A stretch of DNA of 64,000 nt from the IMG/VR virus record IMGVR_UViG_3300032236_000747, positions 248,001-312,000 of that record. One strand, written 5' to 3'. The notes under the pieces were generated by a model that saw nothing but the letters and a program-made list of their open reading frames with translations, was not told the origin of the DNA and did no database searches. Of the stretch, positions 8,750 to 64,000 are shown in pieces. The first letter of the stretch is position 1, and the number at the start of each line of letters is the position of its first letter. Made by a program: the position numbers and the translations under genes.

Positions 8750-8826
8750 TGGTGCGTCGAACAGGGCTCGAACCTGTGACCCAGCGATTATGAGTCGCTT
8801 GCTCTAACCAACTGAGCTATCAACGC
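8750..8826 (-). tRNA. tRNA with CAT anticodon, most likely tRNA-Ile2 (lysidine type)
   Basis: Cloverleaf: acceptor GCGTTGA/TCGACGC, D arm AGCTCAGTTGGTTAGAGC, anticodon arm AGCGA-CTCATAA-TCGCT (ileX-like), T loop GGTTCGAGCC, encoded CCA; own promoter at 8839-8867. Confidence 0.92.
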
Positions 8827-59229: not shown

Positions 59230-60051
59230 ATGAAGAAGATTTTATTTGCACTATTGCTAGCAGCCACAAGCCTAGCACACGCTTGGGACCAACGTGCCCC
59301 TAATCCAGTACAAGCCTGTGCTGTCCATAGCCCATATGGCTTTGCTCAAACAGCTCGTACAGCACAACCAATCTGCAGAGAGGCCTATCTAGTAGCATAT
59401 GATGCACCAGTTAAAATTCCGGCTTATGTCGCTTATACACTACAGCCACAGAACGCACTTGGATGCTTTCCTCGCACTAATGCTTTTGTCGCTGATCAGT
59501 CAATCACTGGTGGAGCTCGCCCTGACGACTACGCAGGAACAGGCTACGACAAAGGACACGCAGCCCCAGATGGAGATTTGTCTTGGTCTGCACAAGTAGA
59601 ATACGAAAGTTTTTTAATGACAAACATGTATCCACAACACGGTTCTTTAAACAGGGGAATCTGGAAGTTGTTAGAGACATCAGTCCGCGGATGGGCCGTC
59701 CAACTGAACCAACCATTTACTATATACGTTGGCGCTTTATATGGCGCTGGTGATCCTACTATTGGTAATGGCGTTATCGTTCCGCACGGTTTCTACAAGA
59801 TTGTTATTAATAACACAACAGGTCAAGTTGCAGGCTGGATGTTCCCACATACCAAACCTTATGTTAATCTAGGCAACGACCTAACCAAGTTCCGTGCTAC
59901 TATAGCACAGATACAACAGCAAGCAGGAGTACAATATAAGTTTCCTGCCAAGGCTGTTGAACTACAACCTGGTCAAGAATGGCCGGTCAACTTTGGCGCA
60001 CTAACAAACGCTAAAAGAGCAAAGTGCGGCGCTAATGCATCCGCAGATTAA
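59230..60051 (+). CDS. Secreted DNA/RNA non-specific endonuclease (NucA/EndA family)
   Basis: Signal peptide; YDKGH, ESFLMTNMYPQ..LNRGIW..LE. Confidence 0.92.
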   Translation: MKKILFALLLAATSLAHAWDQRAPNPVQACAVHSPYGFAQTARTAQPICREAYLVAYDAPVKIPAYVAYTLQPQNALGCFPRTNAFVADQSITGGARPDDYAGTGYDKGHAAPDGDLSWSAQVEYESFLMTNMYPQHGSLNRGIWKLLETSVRGWAVQLNQPFTIYVGALYGAGDPTIGNGVIVPHGFYKIVINNTTGQVAGWMFPHTKPYVNLGNDLTKFRATIAQIQQQAGVQYKFPAKAVELQPGQEWPVNFGALTNAKRAKCGANASAD

Positions 60052-60062
60052 GGAAATAAGAA

Positions 60063-60266
60063 ATGCAAGGTACAGTGAAGTGGTTTAATACCGTAAAAGG
60101 GTTTGGTTTTATCACACCCGAAACAGGCGGAGCGGATGTATTTGTACATTATTCGCAAATTCAAGCAGATGGCTATAAAAACTTAAAAGAAGGACAACAA
60201 GTTCAGTTTGAGCTAGTTAGTACTCCAAAAGGCGATTTAGCAAATTCGGTTACTGTTGTCGGTTAA
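60063..60266 (+). CDS. cspA: Cold-shock protein
   Basis: GTVKWFN..KGFGFI, DVFVHYS. Confidence 0.93.
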
Positions 60267-60316: not shown

Positions 60317-61153
60317 ATGAAAACATTCAAAGACTATCTTAGGGAAGCACAACAGGCCGCAGCAGCGGAACCTGAAGATGATGAACCTCCTAAGAAAAGA
60401 ACACAAACACAAGATCGTCCTAATACCAGTGCCTATGATAGAGCATTCGGACAACAAGGACAAGATCACCCCCTAGCACAAAATCCTGATCACAATCGCA
60501 GAGAACGTGAACCAGAACAGCCAGATGATCCTAGAGGCCGTCAATCTAGCAGAGATAATACTCGCAATAGAACAAGCGGTCTAAGCACACCGGGTATGTC
60601 GGATTTACTTGCTAACCTAAGAGATATAGAGCCACATCCAGATGATGTTCCTAATCCAGACCAAGAACCTAGACAAGACATAGAACTAAGAGTAGACACA
60701 GAAAACCTACCATCGGTGGCAGGACAGGCTCTACAAGCTTCGGGTATTGTCAATCCAGAATGGCACAAGGTAGCTAACCTACCAGGCAACATGAAACGTG
60801 CTATACAATCACTAGGTCGACATTTGTTTAGTAGCATGACAAGTACTCCTACAGAAGAAATACAAATGATTGCTAATCTAGGAGGACAAGGTCCTAACAC
60901 TACAAGAGAAGTTAACTCTGTGGCTAACTGGATTCGTGAACACGGTGATGATCAAGGACCAGGCAACATAGATTTCGCAACTAGCATCCCAGGATACAAC
61001 GCAGAGATACATAACTATGTAGCAGCAGGAATACATTGGTTGTTGGTTAGAGATGAGTTTGGACAATACATTTATAGTTGGCCAGAGCAAGATTCTCTAG
61101 AGCATCGATCAGCTGCAAGACTAGGCAACGATAGACCAAGATTAGGTAGGTAA
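60317..61153 (+). CDS. Putative internal head protein (MKTFKDYLREA)
   Basis: T4 capsid-targeting-like N-terminus; disordered N-terminal half. Confidence 0.6.
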   Translation: MKTFKDYLREAQQAAAAEPEDDEPPKKRTQTQDRPNTSAYDRAFGQQGQDHPLAQNPDHNRREREPEQPDDPRGRQSSRDNTRNRTSGLSTPGMSDLLANLRDIEPHPDDVPNPDQEPRQDIELRVDTENLPSVAGQALQASGIVNPEWHKVANLPGNMKRAIQSLGRHLFSSMTSTPTEEIQMIANLGGQGPNTTREVNSVANWIREHGDDQGPGNIDFATSIPGYNAEIHNYVAAGIHWLLVRDEFGQYIYSWPEQDSLEHRSAARLGNDRPRLGR

Positions 61154-61160
61154 ATATAAA

Positions 61161-62102
61161 ATGAGACCAGAACGATTAAGATTATTTGCTCAACTAGCAG
61201 AGCAGTTAATGGAAGCTAGTACCGCCGGCGATTTAGTTAAGCGCCATCCAGGTGGTAATGAGATCATGCAGAAGTTGCATAGAGATCTAGGACTACCACA
61301 CAACGTAACATGGTCCGAACTAGGCATGGGAGAACGTTTCCATTGGACTCCGTTTAAAGAAACCAAGTTCGGTAGCTGGGTTATTGTTAAAGGACCAAAA
61401 GGCACAGGAGCCATTCAAGCTCAGAAAGGCGGCGGCGCATATCTAGGCATGGCTAGCACAGGTGGCCCTATTGAAACAATCAGAGATGACCGTGGTGGTA
61501 ACATTGTAGACTTTCTAGTAAGACATCTAGGCAAGGATCTAAGAAGATATAGCGGAGACACAGTAGGACCAGCGTCGACATATCAACGAACTGATAATCC
61601 AAGACAAATGACATATCCTGAAAAAACAAAATACAGGAAAGATCTTAAAACACTGGGCGGTTCAAAGAAAACCATGGATGCTGATGCCATACTAAAAAGA
61701 TTTAAACCTCTATGGAAATCTGGTGTAGTAAAAGCTATGGCTGACATTCAAGGTTTTGTTTCTCAACAAATCAAAGCAGGTGCCTATGCCAAAGCTGAAA
61801 GTAAAATTCAAAGATTAAAAAAACTTCAATCAATAATGAATATTTTAGACAATGATGAAGAACTACCACCATCAAATGATTACAGTGATAGTAATATTCT
61901 TTCATCTGCTGTTAAGAGTGCTATTACTCTCGGAGCAGCGCACTACTATCCAGAGTTAACAGGTAATGTAACTAAAAACGGTTACTCTTATCGTGCAGGT
62001 AATGCTGAAGGTACACAAAAGTTATTACAAGATATCGCAGGAGGTGATACAAGTAAAATGTTTACAGTAGCACATTTCTTTAGAAGGAGTTTAATATCAT
62101 GA
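61161..62102 (+). CDS. Hypothetical protein
   Basis: TAAATA-N4-ATG. Confidence 0.8.
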   Translation: MRPERLRLFAQLAEQLMEASTAGDLVKRHPGGNEIMQKLHRDLGLPHNVTWSELGMGERFHWTPFKETKFGSWVIVKGPKGTGAIQAQKGGGAYLGMASTGGPIETIRDDRGGNIVDFLVRHLGKDLRRYSGDTVGPASTYQRTDNPRQMTYPEKTKYRKDLKTLGGSKKTMDADAILKRFKPLWKSGVVKAMADIQGFVSQQIKAGAYAKAESKIQRLKKLQSIMNILDNDEELPPSNDYSDSNILSSAVKSAITLGAAHYYPELTGNVTKNGYSYRAGNAEGTQKLLQDIAGGDTSKMFTVAHFFRRSLIS

Positions 62103-63139
62103 AGCTAGGACAGATTGTTACAGAAGCCAACATAGCCCTTAAGGTATTAAAAGACCCTAAACTACCTAAGCAGTTATACATTGCTTTTACTCATGATAGT
62201 AGTCTTCCTGGAAACATTATTGCTAGACTAGGAACAAAGCCTACAGTAGAGCAAGTAGTTAAAGCATGGAGTGATCTAATAGATAGTTCTCTAAGAGATA
62301 GTAACTACGGTGACCTAAGTTCTAATGGTAAGTTTGATGATTGGTTGTTAAGATTGTATATATCCGGTCAAGTTGATTATGAAGATATCAACGGAGAAGC
62401 AGGAGATGCTCTTGGACTGTGGAGTGCCCTAAGCAGAAGAGGTAGACTTGATGTTAAAGATCAAGACTTCAACAAGTTTAAAGATATCCATAGCCTTAGA
62501 GCAGCAATGAATAAACCTCAGTATCGTGCTGAACTAGAAAGAATTAAAAACTCGGAAATTATTGAAAAACACAAGCGTGCTAGAAAAGAAGTTGTGTTAA
62601 TCGACGATGACAGATTCCATGTTATTCTACCATTGAACTATGGTGCTTGTTATACATTTAATAACTCCGAAGGTATTCAAGCAAACTTCTGTACTGGAGG
62701 TAGTAACGGTCTACACTGGTTCCAGAACTATGCTCCTTATACACCTATTATCAGTATTCTAGATAAAACTAATATGAATAATAAGTGGGGCAAATGGCAG
62801 TTACACGCATGGCCAGCTTTTGGTGCTGCCGGACAGTTAGTTAATGCTGAACAAAATAACAGAGGTGATCTACCGGGAAATGATCGTAAGTTTGCTGAAC
62901 TATTTCCGGGATTAATGAAGAGAATAGTAGCAGCTCTGGCAGAGAAGGGCCCTGAGATTGAACAACTCAGCGGTGAACCGGATTCTACAGGAACTACACT
63001 AATTCGCGGAGGCTACGATATACAAGACGCTATTTCTCGTATTAAACAAACTTTTCCAGCTAGCTATGCTTCGGAAGAGCCCGGAGCAGAAGAACCGGGC
63101 GCCGGCGAACCAGCACCAGGCGGCGAAGAGTTGTACTAA
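62099..63139 (+). CDS. Hypothetical protein (MKLGQIVTEA), C-terminal EPGA repeats
   Basis: Coupled ORF. Confidence 0.8.
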   Translation: MKLGQIVTEANIALKVLKDPKLPKQLYIAFTHDSSLPGNIIARLGTKPTVEQVVKAWSDLIDSSLRDSNYGDLSSNGKFDDWLLRLYISGQVDYEDINGEAGDALGLWSALSRRGRLDVKDQDFNKFKDIHSLRAAMNKPQYRAELERIKNSEIIEKHKRARKEVVLIDDDRFHVILPLNYGACYTFNNSEGIQANFCTGGSNGLHWFQNYAPYTPIISILDKTNMNNKWGKWQLHAWPAFGAAGQLVNAEQNNRGDLPGNDRKFAELFPGLMKRIVAALAEKGPEIEQLSGEPDSTGTTLIRGGYDIQDAISRIKQTFPASYASEEPGAEEPGAGEPAPGGEELY

Positions 63140-63140
63140 A

Positions 63141-63246
63141 CCCACCTTAGGGCCGTTGTCGCTAACGGTTAGGACGAAAGTCCAGGCGTCACAAGGCGGC
63201 TGCTGCCGACCACATTACTTACGCCAGAGTATTGTGATAAGTGAGC
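63141..63246 (+). ncRNA. Unclassified structured RNA with predicted pseudoknot
   Basis: Four hairpins including GGAC-GAAA-GUCC; loop ACGCC complementary to upstream GGCGU; GC-rich patch in an intergenic gap. Confidence 0.55.
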
Positions 63247-63259
63247 AATAAATACTATT

Positions 63260-64000
63260 ATGAAAATACATCATCTCTTAAATGAAACTGTAGAAACTTA
63301 TACTACTGTAGATGAGTTCGTGGACATTATGAAGGATTTTTTACCTTTGGCCATGCATCATCTTAAGATAGATGCGCTACCTCACATTAGGTTAGAAAAG
63401 TATATCAAAGACTCACATCAGCCTACGTTTGGCAAATACGTTAACGAAGAAAATGTGATACACGTAGGCATTGAAAATCGTCACCCATTAGATGTTCTAA
63501 GAACACTAGCACATGAACTAGTACACTTTAAACAAGGAACAGAGAATAGATTAGATGCCAAGAGCGGCGAAACTGGCAGTCCTATAGAGAATGAAGCACA
63601 CGAGGTAGCTGGTATTATCATGCGTCATTTTGGTAAAAGATATCCTCATTATTTTACAGACACAGCTATTACTATTTCCGAAGATTGGAACAAAGTTAAT
63701 CACCACGATAAAACTAACGGCCTAAGTCGTAAAGCAGTCAAAGCCTATCGTCGTGAACATCCAGGTAGTAAACTACAAACAGCAGTTACTACTAAACCTA
63801 GTAAGTTAAAGGCGGGTAGTAAGGATGCTAAACGCCGTAAAAGTTTCTGTGCTCGTATGAGTGGCAACAAAGGCCCAATGAAAAAGCCTAATGGTAAACC
63901 TACTCCTAAAGCATTGGCCTTGCGCCGTTGGAACTGTGAGAGCATTGAAGAAATGCGTCAGCTGATCGAAACAGCTGAACAGGTTATCATGCAGGAAAAA
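63260..64000 (+). CDS. Partial ORF: HEXXH metallopeptidase-like domain plus basic RRKSFCARM...RRWNC domain
   Basis: Manual translation MKIHHLLNE...LRTLAHELVHFKQ...ENEA; runs off the window end; TAAATA-N5-ATG. Confidence 0.8.
   Translation, partial: MKIHHLLNETVETYTTVDEFVDIMKDFLPLAMHHLKIDALPHIRLEKYIKDSHQPTFGKYVNEENVIHVGIENRHPLDVLRTLAHELVHFKQGTENRLDAKSGETGSPIENEAHEVAGIIMRHFGKRYPHYFTDTAITISEDWNKVNHHDKTNGLSRKAVKAYRREHPGSKLQTAVTTKPSKLKAGSKDAKRRKSFCARMSGNKGPMKKPNGKPTPKALALRRWNCESIEEMRQLIETAEQVIMQEK

What the first reader, a model, noticed from the sequence alone, without database searches (positions are those of the whole stretch)
63141..63246. Compact pseudoknotted RNA candidate between late genes
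Seen: stems GGCCGUU/AACGGUU (63151-63170), GGAC-GAAA-GUCC (63172-63183), GGCGG/CUGCC (63195-63207) and CACA..ACU/AGU..UGUG (63211-63236). The last loop, ACGCC (63221-63225), is complementary to GGCGU (63185-63189). A possible closing helix is CAC-CUU/AAGUG. There is no U-tract, so it is not a terminator, and the next promoter lies downstream. Inference: an unclassified ribozyme, riboswitch-like element or sRNA.
Basis: partly seen in the sequence, partly recalled or inferred. Interest (0 to 1): 0.6.

Follow-up and report, generated by a model that had tools for sequence, protein, structure and literature searches.

The report
New phage RNA complementary to ribosomal RNA
The hairpins are real: they are this jumbo phage's single copy of an uncatalogued, strongly conserved structured RNA (about 200 variants in other uncultured phages) whose exposed loops are complementary to universally conserved ribosomal RNA, which suggests, without proving, that it acts on the host ribosome.

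Summary
Window 63140-63246 (+) is a genuine structured RNA. Alone the fold is unremarkable (z -1.6), but the element is one of about 200 distinct variants in IMG/VR contigs.

Four helices covary strongly: 91.6% of cells paired against 62.4% in shuffles, 0/500 shuffles as high. Three unpaired blocks are nearly invariant even when the search did not require them: CCUUAGGAC, GGCUGCUG and AAGUGAGC.

No Rfam 15 family matches, no cultured phage carries it, and only 3 MAG contigs among 185,579 prokaryote species do. The 354,680-bp genome holds one copy. It is non-coding, follows a stop codon by 5 nt and has no conserved promoter of its own.

GGAC-GAAA-GUCC, P3 and P4 are supported by compensatory changes. 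The GGCGU/ACGCC pseudoknot is invariant in 26/26 relatives, so it is untestable. The closing helix is unsupported.

New lead: the conserved unpaired blocks are Watson-Crick complementary to universal rRNA segments, 23S 1916-1937 and 1967-1978 and 16S 517-528 (1/20,000 random block sets reach the observed total). Genes starting just downstream lack Shine-Dalgarno motifs (8% against 36%).

Best reading, about 40%: an rRNA-pairing, ribosome-directed RNA. A new ribozyme, a protein-binding RNA and a 3'-UTR element remain open.

The parts
63137..63139 (+). TAA stop codon of the upstream 346-aa ORF (62099-63139). The RNA begins immediately after it.
   Evidence: In 92 of 117 related loci the same-strand upstream stop lies within 13 nt of CCUUAGG or inside it.
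63140..63144 (+). Conserved A/C-rich 5' flank (ACCCA). In other subtypes this is the 5' strand of helix P1. Here it could pair with GG-C-GU at 63185-63189 as an alternative to the pseudoknot.
   Evidence: Conservation starts about 11 nt before CCUUAGG and there is no conserved promoter further upstream. P1 shows compensatory changes at 5 of 5 pairs in the family. The constrained fold of the window pairs ACCC with GG-C-GU.
63145..63153 (+). Block 1, CCUUAGG(GC); family consensus CCUUAGGAC. It is unpaired in most subtypes. With its flanks (63144-63159) it is complementary to 23S rRNA 1916-1931.
   Evidence: Present in 127 of 132 sequences when the search pattern did not require it. 16 contiguous pairs with E. 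coli 23S, dG -26.6 kcal/mol, z -6.0. Family median is a 12-nt exact match.
63151..63170 (+). The core is CCGUU 63153-63157 with AACGG 63164-63168.
   Evidence: MFE fold. In 26 window-type relatives it is 94% paired, but with one-sided changes only and a 3' strand partly fixed by the search pattern. The equivalent P2 of other subtypes covaries.
63172..63183 (+). Optional hairpin P2' (GGAC-GAAA-GUCC), capped by a GNRA or CUAGU loop in relatives and absent in some.
   Evidence: 100% paired, with compensatory changes at 5 of 6 pairs in 26 relatives.
63185..63190 (+). GGCGUC, the 5' strand of the proposed pseudoknot. It resembles 23S 1972-1977 (GGCGUA) in the same sense.
   Evidence: Invariant in 26/26 window-type relatives. 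23S sequence.
63195..63207 (+). Hairpin P3 with the near-invariant loop GGCUGCU (63198-63204). 63196-63205 is complementary to 16S rRNA 519-528.
   Evidence: Stem covaries: GC/CG/AU in 100 sequences. The loop is GGCUGCUG in 98 of 101 sequences when not required. A 10-11-nt exact match to 16S in 182 of 188 members. Window duplex dG -24.8 kcal/mol, z -3.0.
63211..63236 (+). Hairpin P4. Its loop L4 is UACGCCAG (63220-63227). ACGCC (63221-63225) is the 3' strand of the proposed pseudoknot. 63219-63226 is complementary to 23S 1971-1978.
   Evidence: Compensatory changes at 7 of 9 pairs. The loop defines the subtype. An 8-nt match to 23S; duplex dG -13.8 kcal/mol, z -2.9.
63239..63246 (+). Single-stranded 3' tail AAGUGAGC. 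AGUGAGC is complementary to 23S 1099-1105, which is weak on its own.
   Evidence: Present in 103 of 105 sequences when not required. 7-nt match. Window duplex dG -15.3 kcal/mol, z -6.1.
63247..63259 (+). A/U-rich, G-free spacer without a Shine-Dalgarno motif, up to the ATG (63260) of the 427-aa DUF6321 gene.
   Evidence: G is 0-6% at positions +1 to +8 after GAGC in 187 sequences. An SD-like 4-mer occurs in 8/95 genes starting <=40 nt downstream against 332/924 background ORFs, p = 4e-9. ORF and domain.

Best explanation
SHOWN. Window 63140-63246 is the only copy in this 354,680-bp phage genome of a previously uncatalogued, phage-specific structured RNA. Family cores run 73-107 nt; here it is about 105 nt. 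It lies on the + strand, is transcribed with the preceding gene (no conserved promoter of its own), and is non-coding. Its covarying helices are P1, P2, an optional P2', P3 and P4. They hold three to four nearly invariant segments unpaired: the bulge CCUUAGGAC, the 7-nt loop GGCUGCU, the subtype-specific P4 loop, and the 3' tail AAGUGAGC followed by an A/U-rich, G-free stretch. The window carries a divergent subtype with an extra hairpin.

INFERRED MECHANISM. The displayed segments are antisense to universally conserved rRNA. These are 23S 1916-1937 and 1967-1978, which by my own knowledge is the H69-H71 subunit-interface region, and 16S 517-528, the 530 loop. 23S 1099-1105 may be a further site. 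The RNA would therefore work by base-pairing with host ribosomal RNA, in one of two ways:
- In cis, as part of the mRNA. It would hold a ribosome or subunit between the stop codon 5 nt upstream and the SD-less start codon 13 nt downstream.
- As a released small RNA that binds free subunits or assembly intermediates.

In the window subtype two of these antisense segments are paired within the RNA with look-alikes of their targets. This would be a closed form.
For: The family is real.
- Covariance model R1 found exactly one hit in each of 100 sources and one in the own genome, at 63135-63250.
- Covariation: 91.6% paired against 62.4% in shuffles, covariation score 0.498 against 0.133, 0/500 shuffles as high; slid controls score 0.03-0.10.

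The blocks are near-invariant when not required by the search: 98/101, 103/105 and 127/132.

Strand: G-U pairs 51 against A-C 22, and G-U is the commonest pair at some positions. The element is always co-oriented with an ORF that ends just upstream.

It is non-coding: lengths are spread equally over all three residues mod 3, and 117/188 have stops in all three frames.

rRNA complementarity, tested against E. coli rrnH.
- Exact antisense matches of five blocks are 9, 8, 8, 7 and 8 nt, summing to 40. The null mean is about 32. This total is reached by 1/20,000 random sets and 3/20,000 within-block shuffles.
- Sense, reversed and complement-only controls give 31-32.
- Family medians are 12 nt (23S 1917-1931) and 10 nt (16S 517-528), both longer than the 7 and 8 nt the pattern required.
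- P4-loop subtypes a, c and d match 23S 1929-1937, 1971-1978 and 1968-1976. That 23S stretch is the top of 862 rRNA windows (37 against 22.5 +/- 2.5); 0/5000 shuffles reach it.
- Window duplexes: dG -26.6, -24.8, -13.8 and -15.3 kcal/mol.
- A diverged second copy in another phage lacks block 1, but its P4 loop reads UCGCUACCUU. By inspection of the sequences, this is antisense to 23S 1927-1936.
- 23S 1900-1972 is identical in five Bacteroidota genomes.

Context.
- Genes starting <=40 nt downstream are poor in SD motifs: 8/95 against 332/924, p = 4e-9.
- The phage encodes a ribosomal protein bS21 homologue. So do 3 of 5 other records carrying the RNA.
Against: - There is no transcript or binding evidence. 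No RNA run holds the locus.
- By my own knowledge the rRNA targets are largely base-paired or buried in mature ribosomes.
- P4 loops of subtypes b (about a quarter of the family) and e show no significant complementarity: z -0.5 and -0.75.
- The tail match (7 nt) and the P2-loop match are individually at chance level, and the P2-loop position N varies.
- The rRNA idea was formed after other ideas failed, so the p-values are post hoc.
- Invariant loops could equally be a catalytic core or a protein-binding surface.
- In about 40% of loci the next gene is far away or has its own promoter, and in 3 a terminator follows. A purely cis role in downstream translation therefore cannot be general.
- One copy per 350-kb genome, next to different genes in different phages, is odd for a cis element.
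- The SD depletion may partly reflect the G-poor spacer and related loci counted several times.
Confidence: 0.4

Rival explanations
1. A new class of small self-cleaving ribozyme that processes the polycistronic transcript between two genes. The invariant junction and loop nucleotides form the active site, and the variable P4 loop and the GNRA-capped P2' make peripheral tertiary contacts.
For: - Size of 73-107 nt.
- Four covarying helices around about 30 invariant unpaired nucleotides.
- Possible pseudoknot.
- Optional GNRA-capped hairpin.
- One or two copies per genome, independent of the neighbouring genes.
- Intergenic and co-oriented in phage genomes, like several known small ribozymes (my own knowledge).
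Against: - No match to any ribozyme model in Rfam 15, even at E<=10.
- No cleavage site can be named.
- It does not explain why the invariant segments are antisense to rRNA, nor the SD-poor downstream genes.
- A long conserved single-stranded 3' tail is unusual for the known classes (my own knowledge).
Confidence: 0.15
2. A stable trans-acting RNA that binds a protein, phage-encoded or host. It would act as a decoy, for example a mimic of a type III antitoxin RNA that neutralises an abortive-infection RNase, or as part of an RNP. The rRNA complementarity would be coincidental.
For: - Single-copy, autonomous, phage-only distribution.
- Invariant loops.
- GAUUCGCUACC ... AAGUGAGC resembles GAUUUGCUACC ... 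AAGUGCAGC in the 36-nt ToxI repeat (sequence from PMC8610362).
- R1 aligns weakly to the ToxI array of pECA1039: 10.8 bits.
- The sequence after GAGC (A, then U-rich, G-free) fits an RNase E-type cleavage context (my own knowledge), which could release the RNA.
Against: - No tandem repeats.
- No ToxN-family gene next to it or in the genome (the control genomes did not ring either).
- The resemblance is limited to an 11-mer and an 8-mer, and only in subtype a.
- Such extreme conservation across about 200 phages fits a universal target better than a fast-evolving defence protein (inference).
- No conserved neighbouring RNA-binding protein gene.
Confidence: 0.2
3. A cis-acting 3'-UTR or intercistronic element that does not pair with rRNA. 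It could be a structured block that stabilises the upstream mRNA against 3' exonucleases, or stops Rho loading behind the stop codon, or a standby platform for SD-independent initiation of the next gene.
For: - It starts 3-13 nt after the stop codon in most loci.
- No promoter of its own.
- A gene start <=40 nt downstream in about half of the loci, with few SD motifs.
- In 3 loci a canonical terminator follows directly.
Against: - One copy in 354,680 bases. A general stabiliser or polarity blocker would be expected at many genes.
- Flanking genes differ between phages: 118 clusters among 236 neighbours.
- About 30 invariant unpaired nucleotides are far more than a mechanical block needs (inference).
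Confidence: 0.18
4. A riboswitch or other ligand-sensing leader that controls the downstream gene.
For: Multi-helix fold with invariant junction nucleotides. Two mutually exclusive pairings are possible for GGCGU, with ACCC at 63140-63143 or with ACGCC at 63221-63225.
Against: - No expression platform.
- Downstream genes are unrelated between phages and often have their own promoter.
- The element is attached to the preceding stop codon.
- No Rfam riboswitch match.
Confidence: 0.04

Closest known systems
mRNA-rRNA base-pairing elements: Shine-Dalgarno, the T7 gene 10 epsilon enhancer, and the calicivirus TURBS termination-reinitiation signal (my own knowledge)
   Same: A short segment of an mRNA, placed between or next to two cistrons, is complementary to conserved rRNA. 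Here the element sits between a stop codon and an SD-less start codon and is complementary to 16S 517-528.
   Different: This is a structured ~100-nt RNA with several antisense loops. Most of the complementarity is to 23S rRNA, not the 16S 3' end. There is one copy per genome, and in many phages no gene follows directly. Binding has not been shown.
Loop-displayed antisense RNAs such as CopA or RNA I (my own knowledge)
   Same: 7-9-nt complementary seeds are presented in hairpin loops and bulges, and complementarity extends into the stems.
   Different: The proposed targets are trans-encoded ribosomal RNAs of the host, several at once, not a cis-encoded mRNA.
ToxI, the RNA antitoxin of the type III ToxIN system
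   Same: Pseudoknot-forming small RNA linked to phage-host conflict. It shares GAUUYGCUACC and AAGUG(C)AGC with subtype a.
   Different: No 36-nt tandem repeats and no adjacent ToxN gene. The similarity is confined to two short words, is absent from the window's subtype, and R1 scores only 10.8 bits on the ToxI array.
Small self-cleaving ribozymes found in phage-like contexts: hatchet, pistol, twister-sister, HDV-like
   Same: Size, intergenic co-oriented position, covarying helices around invariant unpaired nucleotides, possible pseudoknot.
   Different: None of their covariance models scores, even at E<=10. The strand order does not fit the nested double pseudoknot of HDV-like ribozymes (by inspection). 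Catalysis is untested.
Orphan phage RNA motifs placed after a gene, for example the Mu-gpT downstream element in Rfam (my own knowledge)
   Same: A conserved structured RNA lying directly downstream of a phage ORF.
   Different: No Rfam model matches, and the upstream gene is not conserved here.

Membership tests
Any Rfam 15 family (4227 models) | Covariance-model score at or above the family's gathering threshold | tested here: not met
   The whole window gives only a tRNA at 8753-8826. Scanning 62900-63500 at E<=10 gives only chance hits of 12-16 bits. 16 related loci give nothing. Subtypes a and b at E<=10 give nothing relevant.
Intrinsic (Rho-independent) terminator | G+C-rich hairpin immediately followed by a U-tract | tested here: not met
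   No + strand terminator-like site in 62700-63600. The tail is followed by AAUAAAUACUAUU. Only 3 of 187 relatives have a separate terminator downstream.
tRNA / tmRNA | Cloverleaf recognised by ARAGORN or by the Rfam tRNA and tmRNA models | tested here: not met
   ARAGORN finds 0 genes in 62500-64000. No Rfam hit there.
Type III antitoxin RNA (ToxI-like) | Array of tandem direct repeats (34-45 nt) | tested here: not met
   Tandem Repeats Finder finds none in 62700-63700. There is one element per locus in 100 loci.
Type III antitoxin RNA (ToxI-like) | Adjacent downstream ToxN/AbiQ-family toxin gene | tested here: not met
   The downstream protein carries DUF6321 and the upstream protein has no Pfam family. 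PF13958 is not found in the genome, although the control genomes did not ring either. Neighbours are diverse.
Type III antitoxin RNA (ToxI-like) | Sequence and structure similarity to ToxI | tested here: inconclusive
   An 11-mer with one mismatch plus AAGUG/AGC in subtype a. R1 scores 10.8 bits on pECA1039, in a target chosen after the resemblance was noticed. The window's subtype lacks the 11-mer.
Riboswitch | 5'-leader position with an expression platform (terminator or RBS sequestration) tied to a conserved class of downstream genes | tested here: not met
   It follows a stop codon. Downstream genes fall into many unrelated clusters. Promoter-like sites or terminators often lie in between.
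Small self-cleaving ribozymes | Site-specific self-cleavage | not testable with these tools
   Only the absence of matches to known classes could be shown.
rRNA-complementary (antisense / ribosome-tethering) RNA | Conserved, accessible segments complementary to rRNA beyond chance | tested here: met
   1/20,000 random and 3/20,000 shuffled block sets reach the observed total. Orientation controls are at the null level. 23S 1911-1995 is the top of 862 windows for the P4-loop subtypes, with 0/5000 shuffles reaching it. Family medians are 12 and 10 nt. Subtypes b and e fail.
rRNA-complementary (antisense / ribosome-tethering) RNA | Physical pairing with rRNA or binding to ribosomal subunits | not testable with these tools
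   No RNA or structure-probing data are available, and no RNA-seq run holds the locus.

The most novel reading that the evidence does not exclude
A tRNA-sized RNA encoded by large uncultured phages displays three or four loops that are antisense to the universally conserved subunit-interface and decoding-centre segments of both ribosomal RNAs. These are 23S 1916-1937 and 1967-1978, 16S 517-528, and perhaps 23S 1099-1105. It would use them to seize host ribosomes or subunits, either tethering them to the phage mRNA between two cistrons for Shine-Dalgarno-independent (re)initiation, or silencing or remodelling them as a free RNA. I found no described precedent for a bacterial or phage RNA that pairs with 23S and 16S rRNA at several sites.
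Probability: 0.4. Interest if true: 0.92.

Novelty: categorically new. Interest (0 to 1): 0.8.

Why it matters
If the family is only what has been shown, it is still notable. It is a widespread, phage-only structured RNA with about 30 invariant nucleotides, strong covariation and no match in Rfam. That makes it one of the better-supported orphan RNA classes from viral metagenomes and a ready candidate for ribozyme and binding assays.

If the rRNA complementarity is functional, it would be a new way for a virus to address the bacterial ribosome: by RNA-RNA pairing at the most conserved interface elements. That would give a target that no host can mutate away, and hence a tool independent of host range. 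It would join phage-encoded ribosomal protein bS21, which this genome also carries, as evidence that large phages reprogramme translation. It could also explain how SD-less genes behind the element are translated.

The hypothesis is directly testable with synthetic RNA and purified E. coli ribosomes, because the target segments are universal.

Tried and rejected
- **Cultured phages.** megablast and blastn of 62000-64000 found nothing for the element, and blastn of a subtype-a element found no match. The only hits lay in the DUF6321 gene.
- **Prokaryote genomes.** Only 3 MAG contigs matched, labelled Nitrososphaerota, Lishizhenia and Haliscomenobacter. They are probably phage contigs binned into MAGs.
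- **Minus-strand RNA.** The single-sequence fold has z -0.27. G-U outnumbers A-C 51:22 and gene orientation is constant, so the + strand is favoured.
- **Protein-coding.** Rejected.
- **Own promoter.** No conservation beyond -11, and promoter-like sites are at chance level.
- **sRNA seed against the phage's own genome.** The complements of the blocks are not enriched in the genome.
- **Retron, DGR or reverse-transcriptase link.** No RVT_1 in the genome.
- **tRNA cluster link.** None nearby.
- **Conserved partner gene.** Neighbours fall into 118 clusters. DUF6321 paralogues (80/134 loci) and an 87-aa gene downstream (70/134) reflect synteny in part of the family only.
- **MAFFT + RNAalifold on all 120 sequences.** This recovered only P3, because the other helices are mis-registered. 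A hand-annotated seed and a covariance model were needed.
- **P2 loop (CUNGU) as 16S 1497-1504 antisense.** The central N varies and the family median match is 6 nt, so it is not supported.
- **Pseudoknots of the tail with L3 or L4, and of block 1 with L4.** Only 3-bp options exist and they are not consistent across subtypes. This was judged by inspection and nothing is claimed.
- **Expression.** The only run holding the locus is the DNA sample it probably came from.
- **Literature.** Searches for the motifs and for phage RNAs complementary to rRNA found nothing relevant.
Full report
**Setting.** The window is bases 248001-312000 of a 354,680-bp IMG/VR virus record, rated 100% complete, with 40% G+C. 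The finding lies between a 346-aa ORF with no Pfam or PHROG family (62099-63139) and a 427-aa ORF with a DUF6321 domain that starts at 63260. Both are on the + strand.

**Observation.** The MFE fold of 63135-63262 reproduces the four hairpins, but it is not significant on its own: -35.8 kcal/mol, z -1.62, 17/200 shuffles as good. The minus strand gives z -0.27. No + strand terminator, tandem repeat or tRNA is present, and promoter-like sites are at chance level.

**Known families.**
- Rfam 15 gives nothing at gathering thresholds in the window or in 16 related loci.
- It gives nothing meaningful at E<=10 around the element or around two other subtypes.
- No cultured phage matches.

**Relatives.** Homologues of the upstream protein in IMG/VR (53-58% identity) carry a similar element after their stop codon in 11 of 18 loci.
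- A pattern built from three shared blocks (CCYUAGG, GGCUGCUG, AAGUGAGC) hit at least 119 viral contigs, with a handful expected by chance by my rough estimate.
- The free block was intact in 98/101, 103/105 and 127/132 distinct sequences.
- In all, 200 distinct sequences were collected.
- Among one genome for each of 185,579 prokaryote species, only three MAG contigs match.

**Structure.** MAFFT plus RNAalifold recovered only the GGCUGCU hairpin. From a 23-sequence seed with a hand-assigned structure I built model R1. R1 finds exactly one hit in each of 100 sources, and the window is the lowest-scoring at 22.4 bits.

On that alignment, 20 pairs in helices P1, P2, P3 and P4 (outer and inner parts) gave these results:
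- 91.6% of cells are paired, against 62.4% in shuffles.
- 453 cells show double changes, against 138.
- The covariation score is 0.498 against 0.133, with 0/500 shuffles as high.
- Slid controls score 0.03-0.10.
- 19 of the 20 pairs, spread over all the helices, show compensatory changes.

Other properties:
- G-U pairs outnumber A-C 51:22.
- Core lengths run from 73 to 107 nt, spread equally over all three residues mod 3.
- 117/188 have stops in all three frames.

The common architecture, 5' to 3', is:
- P1, enclosing a 7-nt bulge (UUAGGAC) and hairpin P2;
- hairpin P3, with loop GGCUGCU;
- hairpin P4, with an internal loop and a subtype-specific terminal loop;
- a single-stranded AAGUGAGC tail, followed by about 9 A/U-rich, G-depleted nucleotides.

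The P4 terminal loops that define the subtypes are:
- a: AUUCGCUAC
- b: AGUCGUGCC
- c: UACGCCAG
- d: AACGCCAUU
- e: GGCCGGGAAUCC

**The window's subtype.** A pattern specific to subtype c gave 26 distinct relatives. On their alignment:
- The GGAC-GAAA-GUCC hairpin is 100% paired with compensatory changes at 5 of 6 pairs. In relatives it varies in length, is capped by GNRA or CUAGU, and is sometimes absent.
- P4 has compensatory changes at 7 of 9 pairs.
- P3 has one.
- The first hairpin shows only one-sided changes.
- The five pseudoknot pairs GGCGU/ACGCC never vary.

The pseudoknot therefore stays a plausible but untested pairing. GGCGU could alternatively pair with ACCC at 63140-63143 as a P1 equivalent.

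**Copy number and context.**
- The own genome has one copy.
- Of five other large records, four have one convincing copy.
- One, a 352,754-bp genome with terminal repeats, has a second, diverged copy.
- The same-strand upstream stop codon lies within 13 nt of CCUUAGG, or is its UAG, in 92 of 117 loci.
- Conservation starts only about 11 nt upstream, so there is no promoter of its own.
- Neighbouring genes are diverse: 118 clusters among 236.
- DUF6321 paralogues (80/134 loci) and an 87-aa gene downstream (70/134) mark partial synteny.
- Downstream there is a gene start within 40 nt (62/119), promoter-like sequences, or, in 3 cases, a terminator.
- No RNA-seq run holds the locus.

**rRNA complementarity.** Several blocks reminded me of the reverse complements of universal rRNA primer sites, so I tested them against E. 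coli rrnH.
- Block 1 matches 23S 1922-1930 (9/9).
- The P3 loop matches 16S 519-526 (8/8).
- The subtype-a P4 loop matches 23S 1930-1937 (8 nt; 9 nt, 1929-1937, with the closing C).
- The tail matches 23S 1099-1105 (7 nt).
- The P2 loop matches 16S 1497-1504 (8 nt).
- The sum, 40, is reached by 1 of 20,000 random block sets and 3 of 20,000 within-block shuffles. Sense, reversed and complement-only controls give 31-32, the null mean.

With flanks, the family-wide exact matches have medians of 12 nt (up to 17) to 23S 1917-1931 and 10 nt to 16S 517-528. Both exceed what the search patterns imposed.

The P4-loop subtypes behave as follows:
- c and d match 23S 1971-1978 and 1968-1976.
- The 23S stretch 1911-1995 is the best of 862 rRNA windows for the five loop subtypes together: 37 against 22.5 +/- 2.5, with 0/5000 shuffles reaching it and 0/300 for any window.
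- Subtypes b and e do not contribute: z -0.5 and -0.75.
- The P2-loop match is not robust. Its N position is variable and the family median is 6 nt.

For the window itself:
- 63144-63159 forms 16 contiguous pairs with 23S 1916-1931 (dG -26.6 kcal/mol, z -6.0).
- 63196-63208 pairs with 16S 514-528 (dG -24.8).
- 63214-63231 pairs with 23S 1966-1983 (dG -13.8).
- 63236-63246 pairs with 23S 1099-1109 (dG -15.3).

Two further points:
- The target stretch 23S 1900-1972 is identical in five Bacteroidota genomes. They read GGUGU where E. coli reads GGCGU.
- In subtype c the two antisense segments pair inside the RNA with look-alikes of the targets, namely AACGGUUAGG and GGCGUC.

The names H69-H71, 530 loop and GTPase-associated centre for these rRNA regions are from my own knowledge.

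**Translation context.** Genes starting within 40 nt after the element rarely have an SD-like 4-mer at -18 to -4: 8/95 against 332/924 for other ORFs of at least 150 aa in the same loci (p = 4e-9). Caveats are that the loci are related and the spacer is G-poor. The phage encodes a ribosomal protein bS21 homologue (43.1 bits). Three of five other RNA-bearing records do too, but a complete one does not.

**Other leads.** Subtype a shares GAUUYGCUACC and AAGUG(C)AGC with the 36-nt ToxI repeat. However, there are no repeats and no ToxN gene, and R1 scores only 10.8 bits on pECA1039. There is no reverse transcriptase in the genome. The complements of the blocks are not enriched in the phage genome.

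**Verdict.** The finding is real and is the window's instance of a new RNA family; I put confidence in that at about 0.97. I rate the mechanisms as follows:
- rRNA pairing, with ribosome capture in cis or in trans: 0.4.
- Protein-binding or decoy RNA: 0.2.
- rRNA-independent 3'-UTR or intercistronic element: 0.18.
- New self-cleaving ribozyme: 0.15.
- Riboswitch: 0.04.

Shown: the family, its fold, the strand, copy number, context, and the statistical complementarity. Inferred: any physical contact with ribosomes, processing of the RNA, and the pseudoknot.

Noticed in passing
window 62099-63139, compared with L002-L013: In relatives the homologue of the upstream protein has an extra C-terminal stretch of about 25-40 residues (... 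GPGTY.VTQ.ASGR ... YPDSTEADY ...) before the RNA. The window's ORF ends earlier, in a Glu/Pro/Gly-rich tail, and lacks it.
   Followed up: no
G000:C1:347482-347634 (outside the window); also G001, G003, G005: The phage encodes a ribosomal protein bS21 homologue (PF01165, 43.1 bits). Three of five other records carrying the RNA have one too. A complete 352,754-bp record does not.
   Followed up: partly
G002:C1:76929-77019 (L243): This is a second, diverged copy of the RNA in one genome. It keeps GGCUGCU, a UCGCUACC loop and the AAGUGAGC tail, but has CCUUAAAC instead of CCUUAGGAC. By inspection, its loop UCGCUACCUU is antisense to 23S 1927-1936.
   Followed up: partly
window 59230-60051 and 60063-60266: There is a signal-peptide-bearing non-specific nuclease (phrog_14168). 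It is followed by a 67-aa ORF that looks like a CspA-type cold-shock protein, judged by eye and not tested.
   Followed up: no
window 60317-64000 and L176; 80 of 134 related loci: Arrays of same-strand paralogues carrying DUF6321 surround the RNA in many phages. The downstream 427-aa protein also has an HExxH motif (HELVH), seen by eye.
   Followed up: no
related loci, e.g. L118, L084, L127, L053, L038: In 70 of 134 loci an ~87-aa gene lies downstream (median about 0.9 kb). It resembles the T4 DsbA late-transcription protein, judged by eye. In the 23 loci where it is the next gene, it is often preceded by TTGACA...TATAAT-like or TTGCTT (MotA-box-like) sequences. This suggests T4-like transcription modules in part of the family.
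   Followed up: no
L140, L141, L142 (genome contigs): The only prokaryote-genome hits are MAG contigs labelled Nitrososphaerota (3.8 kb), Lishizhenia (14.6 kb) and Haliscomenobacter (183 kb). They are probably phage contigs binned into MAGs. The two Bacteroidota labels are a weak host hint.
   Followed up: no
whole genome G000: TATAAATA, the T4-type late promoter, occurs 13 times on both strands against about 49 expected from composition. The 'late genes' label is therefore unsupported for this phage.
   Followed up: partly
L245 (pECA1039, 850-1120): Rfam 15 at gathering thresholds reported no family on the canonical ToxI repeat array of Pectobacterium atrosepticum. An Rfam blank is therefore weak evidence against ToxI-like RNAs.
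   Followed up: no
window 8753-8826 (-): This is the only Rfam hit in the window: a tRNA gene (68.7 bits), 54 kb from the finding.
   Followed up: no
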